From Phaeosaccion multiseriatum (lineage: Eukaryota > Protista > Ochrophyta, other classes), in assembly GCA_965112735.1 (NCBI GenBank), contig OZ218950.1:1736001-1800000 (forward strand): a stretch of 64,000 nucleotides of DNA, given 5' to 3'. Below, one piece after another: positions 20,385 through 59,229 of the stretch; within the stretch, counting starts at the first letter, position 1; the number at the start of each line of letters is the position of its first letter. The position numbers and the translations under genes are program-made. Below the pieces are notes generated by a model. It was not told where the DNA came from. It saw only the letters and a program-made list of their open reading frames with translations, and ran no database searches.

Positions 20385-21148
20385 CTACCAACGGTGCTCC
20401 GAAAGCGGGAAAGCGGCGCGCATTTCAAGGGCACCTCTTCTTCTCGCCGCCGCCCCTGCACCCCCCGTCCCATCCCTTCCTCCTCCCCCTCCCATCATTC
20501 CCATCTGCTCGGCCACTTGCAGCTCCCGCACCAGGCCACTCCAGGTGATGCCCAGCTCATGGAGACGCAACTCCAGCTCCAACACCGCAGCCTTCGCAGC
20601 AGAGGCGACAGAGCCAGCAGAGGCAGCACATGTCTCCCTTGGTAGAGTTTCCCACCTCGCTTCAACACCACGACCGTCGTGATCATCTTCATCGTCAAGG
20701 TCAGTAAAGTCTTCATCCAGGTCGCCAAACTCGGTGCCACACAGGACGTAATCCACCGCCATGCTGCCCACCCGCGCCAGCCCTTCGGCTGTAAACTCCA
20801 TGCCGAGCTCCCTCCACTCCTCTTTCTCCTTCTGCTGCTGCCCCTCCTCCTTCTGCTGCTGTCCCTGCTCCTGCTGCTGTTCCTGCTGCCACAGCTGCTC
20901 TGCGCCAGAGCAAAGGTGCTCCTCAAGAGAGACAGCCTCGGCCAGCAGGTGGTGGCACTGCTGCCTCAGGGCGACCAAGAGCGACTCCTCCTCCCTCGAC
21001 TCGGTCGGCACCGCTAACCCAGTCCCTTCCACATCGCCGGCCGGCAGAGGTAAGTCGTCCTCTGTGTGGACTGCGTCCCCTCCATTCTGATGAGTATCGC
21101 CATCGGCCGCCCCTCCGGCTGCTCCGTTCGATGTTGCCGTACCACCAA

Positions 21149-21193
<45 letters not shown>

Positions 21194-24100
21194 ATGAGGA
21201 TGGTGGTGGTGGCGCTGGTGGTGGTGGTGCTGCTACTACTTCCAACGCTCCTCCTCCTCCTCCTCCTCCTCCTGCTGCTGCTCCTGCTGGCGGGGGCTGA
21301 TGGAGCAGTAATAGCTGGATGAGGTTTTGCTCTACGACGGGCAGGAACAAGGCCACGCCCTCTCTCACACGGGCCAGGCGCTCACCGAGGGAAAGCTCCC
21401 CTTGTCCTGACTCCTTCAAAGACAGGAGAGAAGGGAGGGCCACTGATCCAACTTCACCACCGCCTGTCTCACCGCATCTTCCTCTTCCTCCCCCTCCTCC
21501 TCCTCCTCCTCCTCCTCCTCCTCCTGCTGCTGCTGCTCCTACTCCTGCTGCTGCTGCTGCTGCTTCTGCTACTCTATTGCCGCTACTGGTGAACGTCCGC
21601 CGACCCTTCATCAGTGCCTCTACACCGCCGCCTCTTTCATTCAAACTGGTGCCATTCCTCCCTCGCAGCATCTCCGATGGGACCTTGCCAACCGAAGAGG
21701 AAGACACCGATGAGGAGGATGATATCGTCCCTGCACCTGAGCCTTGAGGGAGAGAGCTCTTCTTCCCGGCTGCAAATAGCGGTACTGACACCTGCCCCTT
21801 CTTCTTCATGGCTACCGACCACGCATCTCTCCTCCCCCCCTTCACCTTGGTCTCCAAGTGTAACGCTTGGCCTCTCTCCCTCTCCCTCTCCCTCTCCCTC
21901 TCGCTATCCCTATCCCTTCCCCTCTCCCTTTCCCTCTGCTCCCTGTCTCCACCCTGCTGCTGCCCCTTCTCTCCCACCCCTCTTGTTCTATCGTAGTCTC
22001 CGCCTCCTCCGGACGTGAGCACCGTCATTTCAGACGGAACGACGCTTCCCTCTCCATCTGATGTCCCGCGCCTTTCCTTCCCCTGTCTACCCTCCCTCTC
22101 CTCTTCCTCAACTTCTCTTTCTGAATTGTTCTCCCCAACCGCTTCCTCCTCCCTCTCCCCCTCCTCCTCCTCCTCCTCCTCCTCCTCCTCCTTCTGCCCC
22201 TCAGCGTCTTCTTTTCTCGCGTCTTCGATGGGCACATACCTTCGTCCTTCCCTCCTGAAACGTATTGGAAACATGGCAACCTTACTCACTTTCGAATTCA
22301 GCAGCTCCTCTAACGTGGGGAAAAGCCCCAACCTTCCCCGCTCGTCGGTAAAATAGCCATTCTCGTACACAAGAATGACGTGCCGAATGCCGCTGTCCCC
22401 TCCTCCCCCGTCCGCCGTAGCAGCCATCTGACCGAAGGAGCCTTGCCTATTGAGTCGACTTCCGCCATTCCTTCCATCAGCCCCTCCACCCCCGCCCCCG
22501 CTCCCACCCACACCCACACCCGCACCGCCCCCCCTACCCCTCCTCCCTTTCCCTCCTTGTGCCTCCTTCTGCGAAGCTGCAGCGGCAGAGGAGGAGGTAG
22601 CGGTTGGAGGTGGCTTCTTGGCAATGAAGCTCAGCACAAACTCAGTAGGGCTCTTCCTTCTCAGCAGGAAGGTGCCCTCCGGTCTCCCGCCGCCCTCGAG
22701 CAACAGTCCCTCGGCCTCTTCTCTGCTCAGCCAGCCTCCAAAGTACTGCCAGCCCGCGTCTGACCCCGCTCCTGCTGCTGCTGCCCCTCCTGCTGCTGCG
22801 CCCTCTCTCCTCCCTCGTGCCTCCTCCCCGCCCTCCTCGCTCGAGGGCCCCGTGGAGAGAGGCTGGACGCCCTGCTCCAGTGCCCGCCAAAACAAGACCT
22901 CTAAGCCTCGCTCGTTGACTGCCACTGCGGAAGGACTACCCACGGGAGCGGTCGATGTGGTGGTGGTGGTGGTGGTGGTGGTGGTGGTGGTGGTGGTGGT
23001 GGTGGAGGAGGAGGAGGGGGAGGAGAAGAGCGTACGCTTCAAGCCGACGGGCAGCGGATCAGGCCTTGGTGGTGATATAGTAGCAGCAGCTGCTGCAGGA
23101 TTTGGTGATACGCCTTGAAGGCTGTCCAGCTCCTCCTGCTGCTGTCTGAGACGCTCGTTGCGCTGCTTCATCATGAGCGAGTAAAGCACGCGCATGACTT
23201 CAGATACCGACAACTGGCGACTGAGCACACCACTGATCCTCTCTGCTTGACTTTCTTCATCATCCCAATCGCCCCCCCCCTGGCCCGTCCCACTCGGCTT
23301 GGATCCACCGCTGCCGCGGCGAGAGCCACCAGCGCCACCAGCGCCAGGGGCACTAGAGCCACCGGCGTAGCTTCCCCAACCTCCTCTCCTCCTCCGGCCG
23401 ATGTCGTAATCACCGAGAGACTCATTCCCCACCGTACTGTGCCACTTGCCTGAGAAGGCCGCGGCGGTGGTATAGGCGTTGAGCGCCTTCTTGCCCGCCA
23501 CGTACATGTCGGCCAAGTCCGCCTTGTGCGCTAGGAGCATCTTGACAGCTGTGGGGGGTAGGTGGGGGAGAAGGGCAGAGTGCCACTCGTCGACGGCACG
23601 GAGGCTGTGGCTGCTGGAGAGGTCGAAGACAAAGCAGACGGCGGCAGCTGCCGACCCCAGCAGGCCGTGCTGACACGCCGGGCTGTTAAGTTCGCTGGCC
23701 GACACGTCCCAGAGGTGCATCAGCACCTTCCTACTACTGCTGCCTTTGCCATTGCCAGTGTCGTTGCTGTTGCGATTGTCCCCCCTTCGGCCGCTATTCT
23801 TGTCGCTGCTGTGATCCAGGAGCGGGAAGTGCTCCTGGGGAATAATAGTCACGACATCAAAGCCTGTCAAAGAGAAGGAATGGGATAGTAAGAGATAGTG
23901 CGGGACACTGAGACATGGGGGGACGGAGAACGCAACACGGCACCGCCCTTTTTCCTTCTTCCTCCTTCCTTCCTCGCTTCCCCCGTCAACCTCTCTTCTC
24001 TCCCTTACCCTGAGTTGGTACGTAGTCATATTGGAACGACTGATTGGTCAACCTGCGCACTAGACTGGTCTTTCCCACTCCCGGGCCTCCCACGAGCAAA

Positions 24101-36816: not shown

Positions 36817-37307
36817 CTTTTCCCTTCTTTCCCTCCCTTTTCTTTCTTTTCCTTTTTTCTTGCTCGCTTCTTCAGTGTCTGAGACTCAAGCCGGAAGTTG
36901 AGCTCGCATCCGAGCAGCCTCGCCAACGATGGAGCGAAAACCCACGATGGGGCGCAGAGAGGGACGAGGAAGGGAAGAGAGCGGAGCCTGAGCACGCGGC
37001 CGGGGCCGACAGGGCACACGCCTGCACAGGTCCACGACAGCATTCTTCCACTCGTCCTGCTAAGATCCAGAACGAGTGGAAGAATGCTGTCGTCGACCTG
37101 TCCAGGCGTGTGCCCTGTCGGCCCCGGCCGCGTGCTCAGGCTCCGCTCTCTTCCCTTCCTCGTCCCTCTCTGCGCCCCATCGTGGGTTTTCGCTCCATCG
37201 TTGGCGAGGCTGCTCGGATGCGAGCTCAACTTCCGGCTTGAGTCTCAGGCACTGAAGAAGCAAGCAAGAAAGACAAGAAAGAAAAGGGAGGGAAAGCAGA
37301 GAAAAGC
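36817..37307. repeat. Near-perfect inverted repeat, arms ~240 bp, centre ~37063
   Basis: Centre CATTCTTCCACTCGT-cctgctaagatccaga-ACGAGTGGAAGAATG. Mirror ORFs 36681..37229(-) and 36898..37629(+) share their N-termini. Confidence 0.95.
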
Positions 37308-37639
37308 TTCCCCGGACACGACGGAGTCGGATGAGCCATCTCCTTCATCCGCCCCTTCGGGTTTGTCCATGGACACATCCGCTGGCGTTGAGGAGAGCTC
37401 AGCCTACCCAGCAGCCTGCAATCCCTTTCGCAAACCCCCGAAGAGAGCCCACGAGGGAGTTTACCGAAAGGTGAGTAGTGCGGCACTATCCCTCACTCAC
37501 ACTTACTTACTCACTCACTCACTCACTCACTCACCCCCCTCCTCCCTTTTCATCTCTCTCCGTCTTTTTCTGCCTCAATCCCCTCCCTCTCATATCCATA
37601 CGCGTGCCACCAGAACGCTGGGAGCCTAGCTGTGGGGGG

Positions 37640-38113
37640 GAGGGGCTCCTCCCGCCAACGCCCGTCTGCGTGGGTGAGAGTACGCGTCCAGCGAAACGGA
37701 CGAAGGTTGTGGAGGAAGCGGGACCGGGGTCTGCCAGCAGCCCACCCCCCGGGGGACAGGGACGGGGAGGCTCCTCCCGCCAACGCCCGCCTGGTTCCCT
37801 GGATGAGAATAGGCCTCGCGCTGGAGGCCTATTCACATCCAGAGCACCAGGGAGGAGTTGACGGGAGGAGCCCCCCCGGTCCCTGTCCCCCGGGGGGTGG
37901 GCTGCTGACAGACCCGAGTTCCTCTTCCTCCACAACCCTCCTTTGCTTCGCTGGACGGGTACTCTCACCCAGGGAACAGACGGGCGTTGACGGGAGGAGC
38001 CTCCCCGTCCCTGTCCCCCGGGGGGTGGGCTGCTGACAGACCCCGGTCCCGCTTCATCCACAGCCCTCCTTTAAAGGAGGGTGGTAGAGGAAGAGGAACT
38101 CGGGTCTGTCAGC
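37640..38113. repeat. Nested inverted repeats of a ~125-bp unit (centres ~37820 and 38072/38073)
   Basis: Centres AGGCCTC-gcgctg-GAGGCCT and CCCTCCTTT|AAAGGAGGG. The unit GGCTCCTCCCG(C/T)CAACGCCCG...CAGCCCACCCCCCGGGGGACAGGGAC occurs in both orientations. Confidence 0.9.
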
Positions 38114-38348
38114 CGCAGCATCGCAGAAACGCAGCGGGACGCTGACCCGGCCCTGCTGCGAGGCAAGAATCATTCCGTGGTCCCCTTCCCAGGAGATGGG
38201 ACTCTCATCGTCATGGGCTTATGCCCTTCTGCCCAGTGTAACAAGGAGTCTGCGACGGAGGTGGATATGATGAAGAACCTCAAAGGAACGTTTAAGGGTG
38301 TTTCCTGGATAGATCTCCGTGTTTGGAGCGCCTCCGACAACAACAGCA

Positions 38349-39660
38349 GCATCGACCAGCGGGTCATTGCAACCTTTTCCCCGGGACGATGAGATGGTGG
38401 GCGATTGGCATCGTCGCTTGCAGGAGCAGCTTCGCACTCCCCGCAACCTCGCTGGACTGCCTGTCGTCTACTTTGCAGGGGCAACATGTCAGGCGGCTTT
38501 CGGAAAGATGAACGACAGGGGCCTTGTCTCGCTCGACACAGAGATCAACTCAGCGTTCGGCGTTGCTTGGGGTGTGGAAACTTGCCACAGGGGAGGCCTT
38601 CGTCGCCGTTCAGCGCCCCCACCCGAATTGGCATCTCGTCTCGGGTAGGAAGAAGCTCGCCGTCGACCTGTTCAAGGAGACCATGGCTATCTTGTGCGCC
38701 GCAAGCAGCATCTCCACGGCGCAAACGGCCAATACGGAGTTTGAAGCGGCGTCAAAGGAGTGCCGTCCTGCGAGCGAAGAGGCCTTGCGTCGGAGGAAGG
38801 TGGCACAGAACTGGCTGAAGATCCATTCCCTCAGCTCATGACGAGGAGGAGGAGGCCGGTATCCATGCTCGTGTCCATTGAATCCTCCCCCTCCTCCACC
38901 CCCTCAACATATAGAGGCCGTCCACCCCCCCCCCCTCTTTCTCGCGAGCTGCTCTGCCACTTCCTTCCTCTTCGCACTGACATCAGCGAAGAGGAAGGAA
39001 TCTGCTACATATACAGCAGATTCCTTCCTCTTCGCTGATGTCAGTGCGAAGAGGAAGGAAGTGGCAGAGCAGCTCGCGAGAAAGGGGTGGGGGGGGTGGA
39101 CGGCCTCTATATGTTGAGGGGGTGGAGGAGGGGGAGGATTCAATGGACACGAGCATGGATACCGGCCTCCTCCTCCTCGTCATGAGCTGAGATCTTCAGC
39201 CAGTTCTGTGCCACTTTCCTCCGACGCAAGGCCACTTCGCTCGCAGGACGGCACTCCTTTGACGCCGCTTCAAACTCCGTATTGGCCGTTTGCGCCGTGG
39301 AGATGCTGCTTACGGCGCACAAGATAGCCATGGTCTCCTTGAACAGGTCGACGGCGAGCTTCTTCCTACCCGAGACGAGATGCCAACTCGCGTGTGGGCG
39401 CTGAACGGCGACGAAGGCCTCCCCTGTGCAAAGTGTCCACACCCCAACGCCGAACGCTGAGTTGATCTCTGTGTCGAGCGAGACAAGGCCCATTTCCTTC
39501 ATCTTTCCGGAAGCCGCCTGGCATGTTGCCCCTGCAAAGTAGACGACAGGCAGTCCAGCGAGGTTGCGGGGAGTGCGAAGCTGCTCCTGCAAGCGACGAT
39601 GCCAATCGCCCACCATCTCATCGTCCCGGGCAAAGGTTGCAATGACCCGCTGGTCGATGC
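38349..39660. repeat. Large diverged palindrome, arms ~650 bp, 8-nt loop at 39007-39014
   Basis: GCATCGACCAGCGGGTC...GGAATCTGCT-acatatac-AGCAGATTCC...GACCCGCTGGTCGATGC. The arms differ by substitutions and 1-, 4- and 7-nt indels. Confidence 0.95.
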
Positions 39661-40425
39661 CTTGCTCGTTCTTGAAAAGCATCGCAGGACTTTCGGGGAC
39701 AAGAGGCTCCAAAAGATTCTCGTCAGTTCTCTCAGGACGAGTCTGACGCTATGCATCGTCCATGTGCTCACTCGAGTAATGGCGAAGTGCGCTGGGAGGG
39801 GCTGGCTTTGCCAAGTGGTTGTCGGGCAGCATCGCTTGTCGACAAGCAATGCTAGCACAGCTGAGGAGCCTGACAAAGCCATCGTCCCCCAGCGTACTTC
39901 GCCATGAATCGAGCTGCTGCGTGAACCCTGTGTCTCCCAGAGTCACACATGTCACACCTGTCTGGGAGACCCAGGGTTCACGCAGCAGCTCGACTCATGG
40001 CGAAGTGCGCTGGGAGACGATGACGTCCTCGATCATCAACCACGGAACTCAAGTCGGACAGTGCCTCCTAGAGAGGTAGTGGAGGAGGTTGGACTCGGAG
40101 ATGCTGGGGGGTAAGAAAAATGGTTCCATCGGGCTTTCGATGGTCGTCGCGGTCGCGTTTTTCGCCGCCCAATCTTGTGGGGGAAGCAAGAGGAATGTGG
40201 GCAACGGCACTCCTGCGTCGAACCCTTGTCGTGTTTGAGAATATGTGTACGAGGAGCTCCGCCACTGCTGCCTTCCTTCCTTCCTTCCTTCCTTCCTTCC
40301 TTCCTTCCTTCCTTCCTTCCTTCCTTCCTTGCTTGCTTCCGCCCTCCCCTTACGGGGCGCAAATAAGGAACAAAAAGTAGCCGGTACATCACTTACTATT
40401 TCATTTGCTGCCGTACCAACAACTG

Positions 40426-56623: not shown

Positions 56624-58996
56624 CTAATCGAGCAGGTGCTCCGTCATCGTCTCCGCCCTCTCGTCCCCGCCTACCGCCCTGCGTATAGCACGCTTCACCA
56701 TCTCGAGGGAGAGCTTGTTGCGTGCCTCGCCATGGCACCTCTTCAGCATCTCCAGCGCCACCTCCTCGACCGTTTCGTACTGCCTCGCCTCAACAGACGC
56801 ACGCAGTACCTTGGAGAAAGAGGACAGAGCCGACGGGATGCCCTCTTCCTTCATCTCCCTCAAAACACCCAATGCCTCCATGTGTTGGCCGGCCTTGGCG
56901 CATGCAGCAAAAGCCCTGCTATAGCTTCCTGCATTCGGAGCGGGTCCTTCTGTCTTCATCTCCCGCAACAGCCCCAACGCCTCCACGTATCGGTCGGCCT
57001 TGCTGCACACGTTCATGGCGGCGTTGTAGCTTCCTGCAGTCGGAGCGGGTCCTTCTGCCTTCATCTCCCGCAACAGCCGCAACGCCTCCACGTATTGACC
57101 GGCCTTGTTGCACACGTTCATGGCGACGTTGTAGCTTCCCGCATCCGGAGCGGGTCCTTCTGCCTTCATCTCCCGTAACAGCCCCAACGCCTCCACGTAT
57201 TGACCGGCCTTGCTGCACACGTTCATGGCGGCGTTGTAGCTTCCCGCATCCGGAGCGGGTCCTTCTGCCTTCATCTCCCGTAACAGCCCCAACGCCTCCA
57301 CGTATTGACCGGCCTTGCTGCACACGTTTATGGCGGCGTTGTAGCTTCCCGCATTCGGAGCGAGTCCTTCTGCCTTCATTTCCCGCCACAGCCTTAACGC
57401 CTCCACGTATTGACCGGCCTTGCTGCACACGTTCATGGCGACGTTGTAGCTTCCTGCATTCGGAGCGGGTCCTTCTGCCTTCATCTCCCGCAACAGCCGC
57501 AACGCCTCCACGTATTCACCGGCCTTGGCGCATGCATCAATGGCGGCGTTGTAGTTCGATACATTCGGAGCGAGTCCTTCTGCCTTCATCTCCCGTAACA
57601 GCCCAAACACCTCCACGTATCGACCGGCCTTGGTGCATACTTTAATGGCGTTGTTGTAGCTTCCTGCATTCGGAGCAGGTCCTTCTGCCTTCATCTCCCG
57701 CAACAGCCGCAACGCCTCCACGTGTGCTCCGGCCTTGGCGCATGCCTCAATAAGGCCGTTGTAGCTATTTACGTGTGGAGTAGATCCTCGAGCCTTCATG
57801 TTCCTCAAAAGCAACGGAATTCTGTCGTGCTCCCCGCTTCTGATGCAGGCCATCATCGCAAGCCTACAGTGATGCCCATTGGGTATCACGCCTTTCCCTT
57901 CCATACCCCTCAGCAGCCCAACAGCTCTGTCCGAACTACTCGACTCGAGACAGACAAGTAAGGCCTCAGTGTACACGGAATCATCAAGGGCGATGCCTAC
58001 TGCCAGCACGTAGTCCCACAGGTCCCATGCTCCATCCAACCATCCCTCCCGACGACACACACCCATGGCGATAGCAAAGTTGCCGGCATTGGCGTCCAAG
58101 CCGTACTCGGGCGCTCTTCCCAGCAGTAGCAGTGCTTCTCCAGGCTGGCCAGCTCTATCCACAGCGGCGATAGCGTCGCTGAAATTGTGATGGCTGGGTG
58201 GAACCCCATGTGTTTGCATCTCCTTCAGAAGCTGCAGTGCCTGGTCTGCCTTCCCTCCTTTGCGACACCCCCTAATCGCCGCCGAGTACGTCCGCGAGTC
58301 CGGCTGCAATCCTACTACAGGCATCTCCCGAAGAAGACCCATGGCTTCATCGTATCTTTCAGCCAGACAACAGGCGTCAATGGCGGCGTTGTAGTGGAGA
58401 ACGTTTGGCATTAGCGCTCCGTGCTTCTGCGTCTCTATCTCCCTCAGCAGACCAAGTGTCTCCTCCCATTGGCCGCAGTGGCCGAAGGCCTCCACCACTG
58501 CGTCGAGAAGCGGCGCATCAATGGGCAGTGGCGATCGCACCGCCGCCTCCCACTCACCTCTCACTCTCTTCCAGTCCTTGGCCTCACGCGCGGCTTCCAA
58601 GCGCTCCAGTGTCTCGAGCCACAACGAGGGGGCTGCTGGGGAGGCATTGTGAGTAGGCACCGCAGAGGGAGAGGGGCCACAAGTTGAGAAAAAAGCCCCC
58701 TCCCTGGTACTGCGCGCCACGAGAGATCCACCCCACCGGTGCGACAAGAACCTCGCCAGATACGCAGGGGTGACAGCAAAGGCAGGGGCTGGCGCGGCAC
58801 CAGATGCGGAATACGGAGCACCAGGAGCTCTCCGCCGCCTGTTACTTCTGCTACTGGTGCTGCTGGTGCTGCTCCTGCTGCTGCTGGTGCTGCCACTGCT
58901 GCACGCTCTCCTCATCATCATCTTCATGCACCCAGCACCCACATCATCTGCGCTGCCTAAAAGTAACGACTTCAACCGCCCCATCTGGAACCCCAT
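56624..58996 (-). CDS. Pentatricopeptide repeat (P-class PPR) protein, intronless, probably organelle-targeted
   Basis: At least 15 35-aa motifs, e.g. SYNAAMNVCSKAGQYVEALGLLREMKAEGPAPD. R/S-rich N-terminus. Start uncertain (several Met). Confidence 0.95.
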   Translation of the reverse strand: MGFQMGRLKSLLLGSADDVGAGCMKMMMRRACSSGSTSSSRSSTSSTSSRSNRRRRAPGAPYSASGAAPAPAFAVTPAYLARFLSHRWGGSLVARSTREGAFFSTCGPSPSAVPTHNASPAAPSLWLETLERLEAAREAKDWKRVRGEWEAAVRSPLPIDAPLLDAVVEAFGHCGQWEETLGLLREIETQKHGALMPNVLHYNAAIDACCLAERYDEAMGLLREMPVVGLQPDSRTYSAAIRGCRKGGKADQALQLLKEMQTHGVPPSHHNFSDAIAAVDRAGQPGEALLLLGRAPEYGLDANAGNFAIAMGVCRREGWLDGAWDLWDYVLAVGIALDDSVYTEALLVCLESSSSDRAVGLLRGMEGKGVIPNGHHCRLAMMACIRSGEHDRIPLLLRNMKARGSTPHVNSYNGLIEACAKAGAHVEALRLLREMKAEGPAPNAGSYNNAIKVCTKAGRYVEVFGLLREMKAEGLAPNVSNYNAAIDACAKAGEYVEALRLLREMKAEGPAPNAGSYNVAMNVCSKAGQYVEALRLWREMKAEGLAPNAGSYNAAINVCSKAGQYVEALGLLREMKAEGPAPDAGSYNAAMNVCSKAGQYVEALGLLREMKAEGPAPDAGSYNVAMNVCNKAGQYVEALRLLREMKAEGPAPTAGSYNAAMNVCSKADRYVEALGLLREMKTEGPAPNAGSYSRAFAACAKAGQHMEALGVLREMKEEGIPSALSSFSKVLRASVEARQYETVEEVALEMLKRCHGEARNKLSLEMVKRAIRRAVGGDERAETMTEHLLD
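56845..57775. repeat. Tandem array of about 9 highly similar 105-bp units (PPR-coding)
   Basis: Unit ...CCTTCTGCCTTCATCTCCCG.AACAGCC.CAACGCCTCCACGTATT.ACCGGCCTTG... recurs every 105 bp. Confidence 0.95.
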
Positions 58997-59229
58997 CTGT
59001 GAAGATCCTGTGAAGCGGGTCGGAGCACCCTTCACCCTTCTTTCCGCTGGCCGTGTGAGGACTGCTTCAGTATGGCAGAGAGAAAGAGATTTTTAGGCTG
59101 CTGTCTCTCCGCCCTCCAGAAGCTCTAGCACTGTATTGTATCTCGGGAGCTGAGGCCCCTCCTTCCCCTTCTGCTCTTCTCGGCACCGCGAGTACTCCTG
59201 CTCTCCAGGCAAAGCGACTGCTTCATGCT

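What the first reader, a model, noticed from the sequence alone, without database searches (positions are those of the whole stretch)
38081..40035. UDG-fold domain followed by ~33-aa helical repeats: candidate new repeat-guided nucleic-acid-acting protein family (decayed copy)
Seen: correcting two frameshifts in the left arm, using the intact inverted copy 39140..39712, gives ...GTLIVMGLCPS...KGVSWIDL...EMVGDWHRRLQEQLR...LPVVYFAGATCQAAF...AVQRPH(P/A)(N/S)WHL...AVDLFKETMAIL. Established: the uracil-DNA glycosylase superfamily has the same order of elements (hhhhGxxP motif A, a strand, a helix, PxhhhhG, the HPS motif B, a terminal helix). Seen: where the + strand resumes at ~39661 it reads LEKHRRTFGDKRLQKILVSSL and, 100 nt later (33 codons plus 1 nt), LE*WRSALGGAGFAKWLSGSIACR. 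Two more fragments, LGDTGFTQQLDSWRSTLGDDGFVRLLSCASIACR (-) and LGDPGFTQQLDSWRSALGDDD (+), fit the same ~33-aa unit. Inference: the ancestral gene joined a glycosylase-like domain to tandem ~33-aa helical repeats, a length typical of TALE-, PPR-, TPR- and ankyrin-type solenoids. It could be a modular DNA/RNA-targeting enzyme. I do not recognise this architecture.
Basis: partly seen in the sequence, partly recalled or inferred. Interest (0 to 1): 0.85.

Follow-up and report, generated by a model that had tools for sequence, protein, structure and literature searches.

The report
Dead copy of virus-linked glycosylase-repeat gene
The window holds a broken, folded-back remnant of a gene from an undescribed, apparently giant-virus-associated family of algal proteins that join a uracil-DNA-glycosylase-like domain to a row of 33-residue repeats with a few highly variable positions, a layout that suggests, without proving, a repeat-guided enzyme acting on DNA.

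Summary

**The window locus.** 38338-39674 is a 95 % palindrome. Its right arm keeps a 190-aa ORF. The left arm carries the same coding sequence broken by indels at 38375, 38563 and 38823, plus the N-terminal part. Fragments of about one 33-aa repeat unit lie at 39752-40111, duplicated by two small palindromes.

**Relatives.** An exhaustive HMMER search found about 20 true relatives at 27-48 % identity (26 hits in all), in Tribonema minus, two pavlovophyte haptophytes and metagenomes. None has a Pfam family. The members that are not truncated show the predicted architecture: N-terminal domain, ~120-aa linker, then 2 to about 25 tandem repeats of 32-36 aa.

**Fold.** AlphaFold2 models the N-domain at pLDDT 93.5. 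Every one of the top 50 solved-structure matches is a UDG-superfamily enzyme (Z up to 12.5).

**Repeats.**
- They match no known fold.
- The model gives helix-strand-helix units, not purely helical ones.
- Hypervariable positions include a diresidue after a conserved Cys.

**New here: virus context.** Intact members sit among giant-virus core genes in Tribonema, on an IMG/VR viral contig, and beside a viral-type helicase.

**Limits.** The window copy is a pseudogene. DNA or RNA targeting remains an inference. Other first-stage notes on this genome report UDG-like domains fused to other repeat arrays; I did not test them.

The parts
38081..38392 (+). Left arm, first frame: N-terminal part of the UDG-like domain. 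It holds strand 1 plus the motif-A loop 'GLCPS', strand 2 'WIDL', and 'SAS..N..IDQ'. There is no in-frame ATG upstream of the domain.
   Evidence: ORF list; aligns to family columns.
38375..38375 (+). Frameshift: one extra T relative to the right arm.
   Evidence: Arm-to-arm alignment.
38393..38566 (+). Left arm, second frame: helix 'DDEMVGDWHRRLQEQL' and strand 3 with 'VVYFAGATCQ'. It ends at a 4-nt insertion (38563-38566).
38567..38841 (+). Left arm, third frame: last strand plus motif B, degenerated here to 'HPN'; then the C-terminal helix 'FKETMAIL', the start of the linker, and a stop. A 7-nt indel lies at 38823.
38338..39674 (.). Large palindrome, arms about 38338-39006 and 39015-39674, 8-nt apex, 95 % identity.
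   Evidence: Both arms and both outer boundaries are present without mismatch in Logan contigs of four runs of one sample.
38884..39137 (.). Central 254-bp fold-back element. It also occurs elsewhere in the genome with other flanks and probably seeded the larger palindrome.
   Evidence: Symmetric loose ends of contigs at 38883/38884 and 39137/39138 in runs X2 and X4. The seeding role is inference.
39140..39712 (-). Right arm: uninterrupted 190-aa ORF covering the domain from 'IDQ' to the start of the linker. It lacks strand 1 and motif A, and motif B is degenerated to 'HAS'.
   Evidence: phmmer E 2e-17 to P0001; alignment.
39752..39994 (-). One nearly complete 33-aa repeat unit of the family ('LGD.GF...LDSWRS.LGDDGFVRLLS..SIACR').
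   Evidence: Repeat HMM built without window sequences: E 6e-5, HMM positions 2-31.
39780..40111 (+). Two partial repeat units on the + strand. They are the inverted counterparts of the unit above.
   Evidence: HMM E 0.011 and 0.03; palindromes 39771-39913 (73 %) and 39880-40022 (86 %).
36817..38116 (.). Upstream chain of palindromes (36817-37306, 37637-38006, 37702-38068, 38029-38116). They adjoin the locus but cannot be shown to derive from the gene.
   Evidence: Neither the domain HMM nor the repeat HMM hits this stretch.

Best explanation
SHOWN. Window 38081-40111 is a non-functional remnant of a gene from an unnamed protein family. Family members have four parts:
- an N-terminal domain of about 195 aa with the uracil-DNA-glycosylase (UDG) superfamily fold;
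- a helical linker of about 120 aa;
- 2 to about 25 tandem repeats of 32-36 aa, core F-V-T-F-M-C-x-x-V-A-A-R-L;
- a conserved C-terminal cap.

The window copy lost its start, its linker and most of its repeats. A fold-back doubled it into a 1.3-kb palindrome around a dispersed 254-bp fold-back element. Afterwards it gained frameshifts and substitutions in the most conserved motif (HPS became HPN in one arm and HAS in the other).

SHOWN. Intact members occur inside an integrated giant-virus-like gene block in Tribonema minus, on an IMG/VR viral contig, and beside a viral-type helicase. Others have ordinary host neighbours in a pavlovophyte.

INFERRED. The family is carried by phaeovirus- or xanthovirus-like giant viruses or related mobile elements and is occasionally left in, or captured by, algal genomes. 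The window copy is such a relic.

INFERRED mechanism of the intact protein. The repeat array is the recognition module. Its scaffold positions are under purifying selection, while a few positions change almost only by amino-acid replacement, above all the two residues after the Cys. The array positions the UDG-fold domain, which keeps an enzyme-like set of invariant polar residues, on a defined stretch of nucleic acid, most likely double-stranded DNA. There the domain flips out and binds or excises a base.
For: **Homology.** 26 HMMER hits at E up to 0.001, 8 of them at E up to 1e-10, 27-48 % identity.

**Architecture.** Seen in P0003, P0004, P0005, P0007, P0008/P0028, P0011, P0018, P0025 and P0029, and in the 1157-aa product of L006.

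**Fold.**
- AF2 pLDDT 93.5, pTM 0.90.
- Foldseek top hit is a family-4 UDG at probability 1.0.
- VIA-align gives Z 12.5, with 46 chains at Z of 8 or more among the chains compared. All 50 entries listed are UDG superfamily, and model residues 1-194 are covered.
- AFDB and BFVD searches also return UDG-like proteins.
- 66 of 100 ESM feature neighbours carry PF03167.
- Motif A follows strand 1 (E26-30) and H159-P-S follows strand E149-157.
- W60, D62, Q77, A113, G114, C117, P158 and H159 are nearly invariant in 22 sequences.

**Repeats.**
- In the viral member, 7 positions show 891 replacement against 77 silent pairwise differences. The other 26 positions show 535 against 1536.
- In Tribonema P0004 the DNA repeats are near-identical apart from codons 24-27 and 5-9. 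Its paralogue P0027 has another order of cassettes.

**Virus context.**
- L003 neighbours: Pox_A32 4e-10, AEP_C962R 3.5e-12, PDDEXK_1 2.6e-6, Pox_A22 1e-4.
- L006 lies on an IMG/VR contig with SNF2 and SF1 helicases and a hybrid histidine kinase.
- L012 lies beside a DUF5906 helicase.
- Xanthophyte genomes are reported to carry giant-virus genes (PMC13236599, PMC12993054).

**Decay of the window copy.**
Against: **No activity or binding data exist.**

**Sequence similarity to UDGs is essentially absent.**
- Pfam UDG matches 1 of 22 members at E 0.017.
- hhalign against E. coli Mug finds nothing.
- A PDB profile search finds nothing.

**Motif A (G-L-Y-P) lacks the Asp/Glu/Asn of UDG families 1-4.**

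**The repeat model is weak.**
- It is only moderate (pLDDT 67) and differs in overall shape from the AlphaFold DB model of the paralogue.
- It has no structural match.

**The variable diresidue may not be a recognition code.**
- It uses only D/G/N/S then G/S, residues that are also the usual helix N-caps and turn formers, so part of the variation could be structurally neutral.
- One array (Diacronema P0029) is almost uniform GG.

**The virus link has gaps.**
- Window neighbours are ordinary host genes.
- No relative was found in BFVD, so sequenced reference phaeoviruses seem to lack the family.
Confidence: 0.6

Rival explanations
1. The array is a protein- or glycan-binding solenoid, like the ankyrin, LRR, Kelch or FNIP arrays common in giant viruses. 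The UDG-fold domain is then a non-catalytic scaffold or adaptor, as the poxvirus D4 glycosylase is when it serves as a polymerase processivity factor. On this reading the family acts in virus-host protein conflict, not on nucleic acid.
For: - The AF2 unit is helix-strand-helix with a parallel sheet, closer in style to alpha/beta solenoids than to TALE, PUF or PPR.
- Motif A lacks a canonical catalytic residue.
- Kelch genes neighbour two Tribonema copies.
- Hypervariable positions together with reshuffled paralogues are also the signature of arms-race binding proteins.
Against: - The UDG-fold domain keeps a set of invariant polar residues, including the motif-B His. A mere scaffold would not need this.
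- There is no structural match to LRR or ankyrin (best LRR Z 4.4) and no Pfam repeat family.
Confidence: 0.25
2. The intact family targets RNA rather than DNA, as PPR, PUF and OPR arrays of similar unit length do. The UDG-fold domain would then act on an RNA base.
For: - The unit length of 32-36 aa is typical of RNA-binding helical repeats.
- Unchecked first-stage notes on this genome describe UDG-like domains fused to C3H-type zinc-finger arrays, which usually bind RNA.
Against: - To my knowledge (recalled from memory, not checked here) all characterised UDG-superfamily enzymes act on DNA.
- The virus gene neighbourhood is DNA-metabolic: primase, resolvase, packaging ATPase, helicases.
- No similarity to PPR or PUF was found.
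Confidence: 0.08
3. What matters in this window is not the dead protein but the 1.3-kb inverted repeat. If transcribed, it would give a long hairpin RNA and small RNAs that silence incoming or resident copies of the virus-linked family, making it a domesticated antiviral hairpin locus.
For: - The arms are 95 % matched with an 8-nt loop.
- Other first-stage notes list many gene-derived hairpins in this genome (unchecked).
- The source gene is virus-associated.
Against: - No RNA run holding the stretch was found, so there is no sign of transcription.
- The arms have drifted 5 % apart with indels and neither arm is preserved.
- A dispersed fold-back element at the apex gives a purely mutational explanation.
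Confidence: 0.1
4. The palindrome chain is an assembly artefact of fold-back (chimeric) long reads, so only one arm exists in the genome.
For: A first-stage note reports a 57-kb perfect-looking palindrome elsewhere in the assembly (unchecked).
Against: - The arms differ by 18 substitutions and multi-base indels.
- Arm-specific sequence and both outer junctions are present with zero mismatches in contigs built from four runs. These runs come from the same sample, so this is not independent support.
Confidence: 0.03

Closest known systems
Family 4 and family 5 uracil-DNA glycosylases and UdgX (for example Sulfolobus tokodaii UDG 4ZBY, Thermus thermophilus 1UI0 and 2D3Y, Mycobacterium smegmatis UdgX 6AIL)
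   Same: - Same alpha/beta fold: Z 12.5 to 9.6, about 160 residues aligned at 3.3-3.7 A.
- Same placement of a G-x-x-P loop after strand 1 and of H-P-S after the last strand.
- Like family 5 (motif GLAPA, from my own knowledge), motif A has no acidic or amide catalytic residue.
   Different: - 7-12 % identity, with no significant sequence or profile match.
- It has its own invariant residues (W-x-D on strand 2, IDQ, T-C-Q).
- The Fe-S cluster cysteines were not looked for.
- It is fused to a linker and a repeat array. It is eukaryote- and virus-borne rather than prokaryotic.
TAL effectors of Xanthomonas and TALE-likes (Burkholderia Bat proteins, marine MOrTL proteins)
   Same: - Tandem units of about 33 aa that can be near-identical at the DNA level.
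- Differences are concentrated in a diresidue in a loop between two secondary-structure elements.
- Paralogues differ in the order of unit types.
- ESM features of the array are nearest to TAL effector clusters.
   Different: - No homology: no PF03377 hit and an ESM score of only 0.69.
- The predicted unit contains a beta strand, and no TALE structure was matched.
- Several further variable positions exist.
- The diresidue alphabet is restricted to D/G/N/S then G/S.
- DNA binding is untested.
UDG-like domains fused to DNA polymerase A in phages
   Same: A UDG-fold domain used as the N-terminal module of a larger virus-encoded DNA-handling protein. These are the best BFVD matches.
   Different: The partner is a polymerase, not a repeat array, and they come from bacteriophages.
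Engineered TALE-guided base-editing fusions (TALE arrays joined to deaminases or glycosylase variants)
   Same: They work as the mechanism proposed here would: a programmable repeat array delivers a base-acting domain to a chosen DNA site. This is my own knowledge and a functional analogy only.
   Different: Those are man-made and use true TALE repeats. Here both the natural fusion and its activity are hypothetical.
Leucine-rich-repeat and other alpha/beta solenoids
   Same: The repeat is predicted as a strand plus helices stacked into a parallel sheet.
   Different: - No LxxLxLxxN signature.
- The strand residues are invariant rather than variable.
- The best LRR match has Z 4.4.

Membership tests
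UDG superfamily (fold level) | Alpha/beta fold with a central parallel sheet, matching solved UDGs well above other folds | tested here: met
   Model of homologue P0004:30-330, pLDDT 93.5. VIA-align Z 12.5-6.9, with all 50 listed entries belonging to the UDG superfamily (families 1 to 5 and UdgX by my reading of the entry titles). The window ORF is 33 % identical to the modelled protein.
UDG superfamily (fold level) | Motif A (G-x-x-P-x) in the loop after strand 1 | tested here: met
   G/A-L-Y-P follows strand E26-30 in the model, and Pro is conserved in the alignment. The window left arm has G-L-C-P-S. Equivalence to the UDG motif rests on topology; no residue-level structural alignment was available.
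UDG superfamily (fold level) | Motif B (H-P-S) in the loop after the last core strand | tested here: met
   P158-H159 is nearly invariant and H-P-S follows strand E149-157. In the window it is degenerated to H-P-N (left arm) and H-A-S (right arm).
UDG families 1-4 (catalytic type) | Asp, Glu or Asn in motif A that activates water | tested here: not met
   Motif A is G-L-Y-P, with no acidic or amide residue. It resembles family 5 in this respect (my own knowledge).
Pfam PF03167 (UDG) | Score above the gathering threshold | tested here: not met
   No hit for the window ORFs. Of 22 members, 1 matches at E 0.017.
UDG superfamily (function) | Base excision from DNA | not testable with these tools
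   Needs enzyme assays.
TAL effector repeats | Homology to PF03377 and a two-helix unit forming a right-handed superhelix | tested here: not met
   No Pfam hit. AF2 units contain a strand. No TALE chain appears among the structural matches.
TAL effector repeats | Near-identical units of about 33-34 aa with a hypervariable diresidue | tested here: met
   This is a resemblance of format only.
TAL effector repeats | One repeat reads one base of DNA | not testable with these tools
   Needs binding assays or a complex structure.
Leucine-rich repeats | LxxLxLxxN/C core and a horseshoe matching solved LRRs | tested here: not met
   No Pfam LRR hit. Best LRR Z 4.4.
Genes of giant viruses (Nucleocytoviricota) or their integrated forms | Located among virus hallmark genes or on a virus contig | tested here: met
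   This holds for relatives only.
- L003: A32 ATPase, AEP primase, A22 resolvase, PD-(D/E)XK nuclease.
- L006: an IMG/VR contig.
- L012: DUF5906 helicase neighbour.

It does not hold for the window, whose neighbours are host genes, or for Diacronema L005.

The most novel reading that the evidence does not exclude
Giant viruses of stramenopile and haptophyte algae encode a natural, modular DNA-targeting enzyme. A new kind of 33-aa repeat would read DNA sequence through a few variable residues per unit, as a TALE-like code that evolved independently, and deliver a UDG-fold base-flipping or glycosylase domain to chosen sites in the host or viral genome. That would be both a new programmable DNA-binding scaffold and a natural counterpart of engineered TALE base editors.
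Probability: 0.2. Interest if true: 0.95.

Novelty: new variant of a known kind. Interest (0 to 1): 0.78.

Why it matters
- **A new branch of a well-studied superfamily.** The family would add an eukaryote- and virus-borne branch to the UDG superfamily, with its own active-site signature.
- **A new repeat.** The tandem repeat has no Pfam family and no structural match.
- **The pattern of change is that of a recognition module.** The scaffold is under purifying selection, a handful of positions change almost only by amino-acid replacement, and paralogues carry reshuffled units. TALE, PPR and VLR arrays evolve this way.
- **If the array reads nucleic-acid sequence,** it would be a fresh programmable scaffold fused by nature to a base-acting domain. 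It would also open the question of why algal giant viruses need site-directed base recognition, for example for integration, latency, host-gene control or counter-defence.
- **Even if the ligand is a protein,** the family is a marker of virus-to-alga gene flow across distant algal lineages.
- **The window locus itself is only a relic.** Its value is that it exposed the family. It also shows how a dispersed fold-back element can turn neighbouring DNA into a large palindrome.

Tried and rejected
**Searches that found nothing**
- Pfam and NCBIfam scans of the window ORFs.
- phmmer of the window ORF and profile searches against PDB sequences: no UDG.
- The word-indexed protein search.
- hhalign of the family profile against E. 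coli Mug: probability 0.2. Residue-level equivalence of the motifs therefore rests on topology.

**Fold searches for the repeat array**
- Foldseek PDB, AFDB clusters, VIA-align wide and the ESM atlas gave only noise-level alpha/beta or HEAT-like matches.
- I therefore reject 'LRR', 'TALE', 'HEAT' and 'ankyrin' as assignments.

**Further collection scans**
- A scan of viral contigs with the repeat core pattern found no further locus.
- The first scan with the 22-row alignment failed for lack of a conserved block.

**Rejected or unsupported readings**
- That the window sits in an integrated virus: its large ORFs are host-type, namely kinase, Ras/SH2, EamA and PPR.

**Expression and literature**
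- No RNA run was found, so transcription could not be tested.
- No paper in the library combines 'TALE-like' with 'giant virus'.
- Two recent phaeovirus papers do not mention a glycosylase.
- The literature search was limited and does not prove that the family is undescribed.
Full report
**1. What is in the window**

The region lies in GC-rich (about 59 %), microsatellite-laden eukaryotic DNA. Self-comparison shows a chain of palindromes:
- 36817-37306 (94 %)
- 37637-38006 and 37702-38068
- 38029-38116
- the large one, 38338-39674 (94.8 % over 1352 columns, 8-nt apex at 39007-39014)
- 39771-39913 (73 %)
- 39880-40022 (86 %)

Nothing else in the 64 kb resembles the locus.

The right arm of the large palindrome holds an uninterrupted 190-aa ORF (39140-39712, minus strand). 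The left arm holds the same coding sequence split over three frames (38081-38392, 38319-38648, 38524-38841), and it extends further towards the N-terminus.

A base-by-base comparison of the arms gives 18 substitutions and 5 indels. Relative to the right arm, the left arm has +1 nt at 38375, +4 nt at 38563 and +7 nt at 38823.

Logan contigs of four runs, all from one sample and probably the sample that was assembled, carry both arms, their arm-specific differences and both outer junctions without mismatches. This argues against a read-level fold-back artefact, though it is not independent support.

The same contigs diverge symmetrically at 38883/38884 and 39137/39138. The central 254 bp is therefore a fold-back element that also exists elsewhere in the genome with other flanks. 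I infer that this element seeded the larger palindrome by fold-back repair or template switching.

**2. The domain has real relatives, and they have the predicted architecture**

Pfam, NCBIfam, PDB-sequence and word-indexed searches found nothing.

An exhaustive phmmer search of 1.84 billion cluster representatives found 26 proteins: best E 2e-17, eight at E up to 1e-10, 27-48 % identity.

The named ones are 'hypothetical proteins' of the xanthophyte Tribonema minus and of the pavlovophytes Diacronema lutheri and Pavlovales sp. CCMP2436. Others come from MMETSP transcripts and from metagenome assemblies. None has a significant Pfam family.

Every member that is not truncated shows the same layout:
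- the conserved N-domain: ..LIVLGLYP.., ..WVDLC.LSS...N..IDQ.., ..PCVYIAG.TCQ.., ..RPHPSWHL.., ..FKETM..
- a conserved linker: ..GR.FLT.LLY...SGRFP..H.HLRNVKAH..
- tandem repeats of 32-36 aa: ..LE.W..RLG...FVTFMC-xx-VAARL.DP.F..
- a degenerate last repeat and a conserved C-terminus

The window pieces align along the whole N-domain.

An HMM made only from foreign repeats recognises 39994..39752 (-) at E 6e-5 and two partial units on the plus strand. The window thus contains both modules of the family, in the family's order on the plus strand. The linker is not recognisable. The 'repeats' amount to about one and a half units copied by two small palindromes, not a tandem array.

Both arms have a substitution in the otherwise nearly invariant H-P-S motif (HPN and HAS), there is no in-frame ATG upstream of the domain, and there are frameshifts. 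The locus is a pseudogene.

**3. The fold**

AlphaFold2 was run on Tribonema P0004 residues 30-330 with the 22-row family alignment. It gave pLDDT 93.5 and pTM 0.90.

- Foldseek against the PDB ranks a family-4 UDG first (probability 1.0) and scatters further UDG, TDG and UdgX entries through the list. E-values are weak because the helical linker is part of the query.
- VIA-align gives Z 12.5 for Sulfolobus tokodaii UDG, about 11 for UdgX, Thermus and Thermotoga UDGs and human TDG, 9.0 for E. coli MUG, and 7.6-6.9 for UNG, SMUG and viral UDGs. All 50 listed entries belong to the UDG superfamily, and model residues 1-194 are covered.
- AlphaFold DB clusters and BFVD also return UDG-like proteins.
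- Two thirds of the ESM feature neighbours of the window ORF carry PF03167.

In the model, the conserved G/A-L-Y-P loop follows strand 1, and P-H-P-S follows the last core strand. These are the positions of UDG motifs A and B.

The family keeps its own invariant polar residues (W-x-D, IDQ, T-C-Q, the motif-B His). This looks like an active or binding site rather than a bare scaffold. Motif A lacks the Asp/Glu/Asn of families 1-4, as family 5 does (my own knowledge), so catalysis is open.

Sequence-level tests of membership fail:
- Pfam UDG matches 1 of 22 members at E 0.017.
- hhalign against Mug finds nothing.

**4. The repeats**

AlphaFold2 on P0004 residues 290-709 is only moderate (pLDDT 67, some units 80-90). 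It predicts each unit as a 14-residue helix, a short turn, a 5-residue strand (FVTFM) and a 6-residue helix.

No library gives a meaningful match:
- Foldseek PDB: TM at most 0.27.
- VIA-align wide: best Z 5.5.
- ESM atlas: TM below 0.4 normalised by the model.
- The AlphaFold DB model of the paralogue superposes poorly (TM 0.23), so the overall shape is unsettled.

'Helical repeat' is therefore only partly right, and the fold may be new.

The pattern of variation is informative.

- **Tribonema P0004.** The ten 99-nt units are almost identical. The exceptions are codons 24-27, which form four cassette types (C-DG-I, C-GG-V, C-DS-I, C-NG-I) with linked silent differences, and codons 5-9. The 87 %-identical paralogue P0027 carries the cassettes in another order.
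- **The viral member.** In its 22 in-phase units (a 23rd, the divergent first unit, was left out), seven positions (9, 13, 18, 19, 26, 27, 30) show 891 replacement against 77 silent pairwise differences. The other 26 positions show 535 against 1536, and several scaffold positions have over 120 silent and no replacement differences.
- **Shared across lineages.** The one site that is variable in all lineages is the diresidue after the Cys. In 67 units it reads GG 24, DS 11, DG 9, GS 7, NS 6, NG 6, SG 3, NC 1.

This is the format of a recognition array. Two cautions apply. D/N/S/G are also the preferred helix-capping and turn residues. The ESM similarity to TAL effector clusters is weak (0.69).

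**5.

- **Tribonema.** The intact gene P0027 lies in a run of closely spaced genes without called introns, most on one strand. They include a Pox_A32 packaging ATPase (4e-10), a C962R-type AEP primase (3.5e-12), a PD-(D/E)XK nuclease and a Pox_A22 resolvase. These are giant-virus core genes. Xanthophyte genomes are reported to carry such 'xanthovirus' insertions (PMC13236599, PMC12993054).
- **IMG/VR.** A 51.6-kb viral contig encodes a 1157-aa member with about 25 repeats. Its neighbours are SNF2 and SF1 helicases, a hybrid histidine kinase and a glycosyltransferase. Hybrid histidine kinases are a known peculiarity of phaeoviruses (my own knowledge).
- **Marine metagenome.** One contig encodes a distant member beside a DUF5906 helicase.
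- **Host-type loci.** The Diacronema gene has ordinary host neighbours, and so does the window locus.
- **Reference viruses.** BFVD holds no close relative, so sequenced reference phaeoviruses seem to lack the family.

I infer a virus-borne or mobile-element-borne family that leaves copies in algal genomes. The window copy is one such relic.

**6. Mechanism**

Shown:
- homology
- the architecture
- the UDG fold
- the selection pattern in the array
- the virus context of some members
- the decay of the window copy

Inferred: the array is the targeting module and the UDG-fold domain acts on a base in the bound nucleic acid, most likely DNA.

The main rival is a protein-binding solenoid with a non-catalytic UDG-fold adaptor. 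Lesser rivals are RNA targeting and a present-day role of the palindrome as a hairpin-RNA locus. None of these can be decided with these tools.

**7. Novelty**

Neither module has a Pfam family. All named members are 'hypothetical'. My limited literature searches found no description.

Other first-stage notes on this genome mention UDG-like domains next to zinc-finger or Cys/His arrays. I could not read those loci, and they remain leads.

I rate the finding as a new variant of known kinds: a new UDG-superfamily branch and a new tandem repeat in a natural fusion. There is a minority chance that it is a truly new class of programmable DNA-acting protein.

Noticed in passing
window 38884-39137: The 254-bp core of the large palindrome is a fold-back element on its own. 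Contigs from the same sample leave the window sequence exactly at both of its ends, with at least two other flanks, so it is dispersed in the genome (MITE-like).
   Followed up: partly
window 36817-38116: There are four further overlapping palindromes just upstream, GC-rich, with long artefactual ORFs on both strands. They show no similarity to the glycosylase-repeat family, and their origin is unexplained.
   Followed up: partly
L003 (Tribonema minus JAFCMP010000179.1:267056-289185): A block of closely spaced genes without called introns, with A32 packaging ATPase, AEP primase, A22 resolvase and PD-(D/E)XK nuclease, surrounds the intact family gene. It looks like an integrated giant virus ('xanthovirus').
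   Followed up: partly
L006 (IMGVR_UViG_3300045973_001241:26722-47252): The viral contig carries a PAS-HisKA-HATPase-receiver hybrid histidine kinase next to a family-2 glycosyltransferase and two helicases, one of them with a RING finger. Three neighbouring ORFs of 690-965 aa have no Pfam family.
   Followed up: no
P0004, P0028 and the L006 product, last ~16 residues: The extreme C-terminus (..FL..N.G.K.D.I) is conserved between Tribonema, metagenomic and viral members, after a degenerate capping repeat. It may be an interaction or sorting motif.
   Followed up: no
window 56624-59035 (-): A PPR protein (Pfam PPR_2 at 3e-87) is encoded by 105-nt tandem DNA repeats up to 95 % identical, an unusually homogenised PPR array.
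   Followed up: no
window 20385-24029 (-): A 1214-aa ORF has weak Ras and SH2 Pfam matches, as another first-stage note says. I did not examine it further.
   Followed up: no
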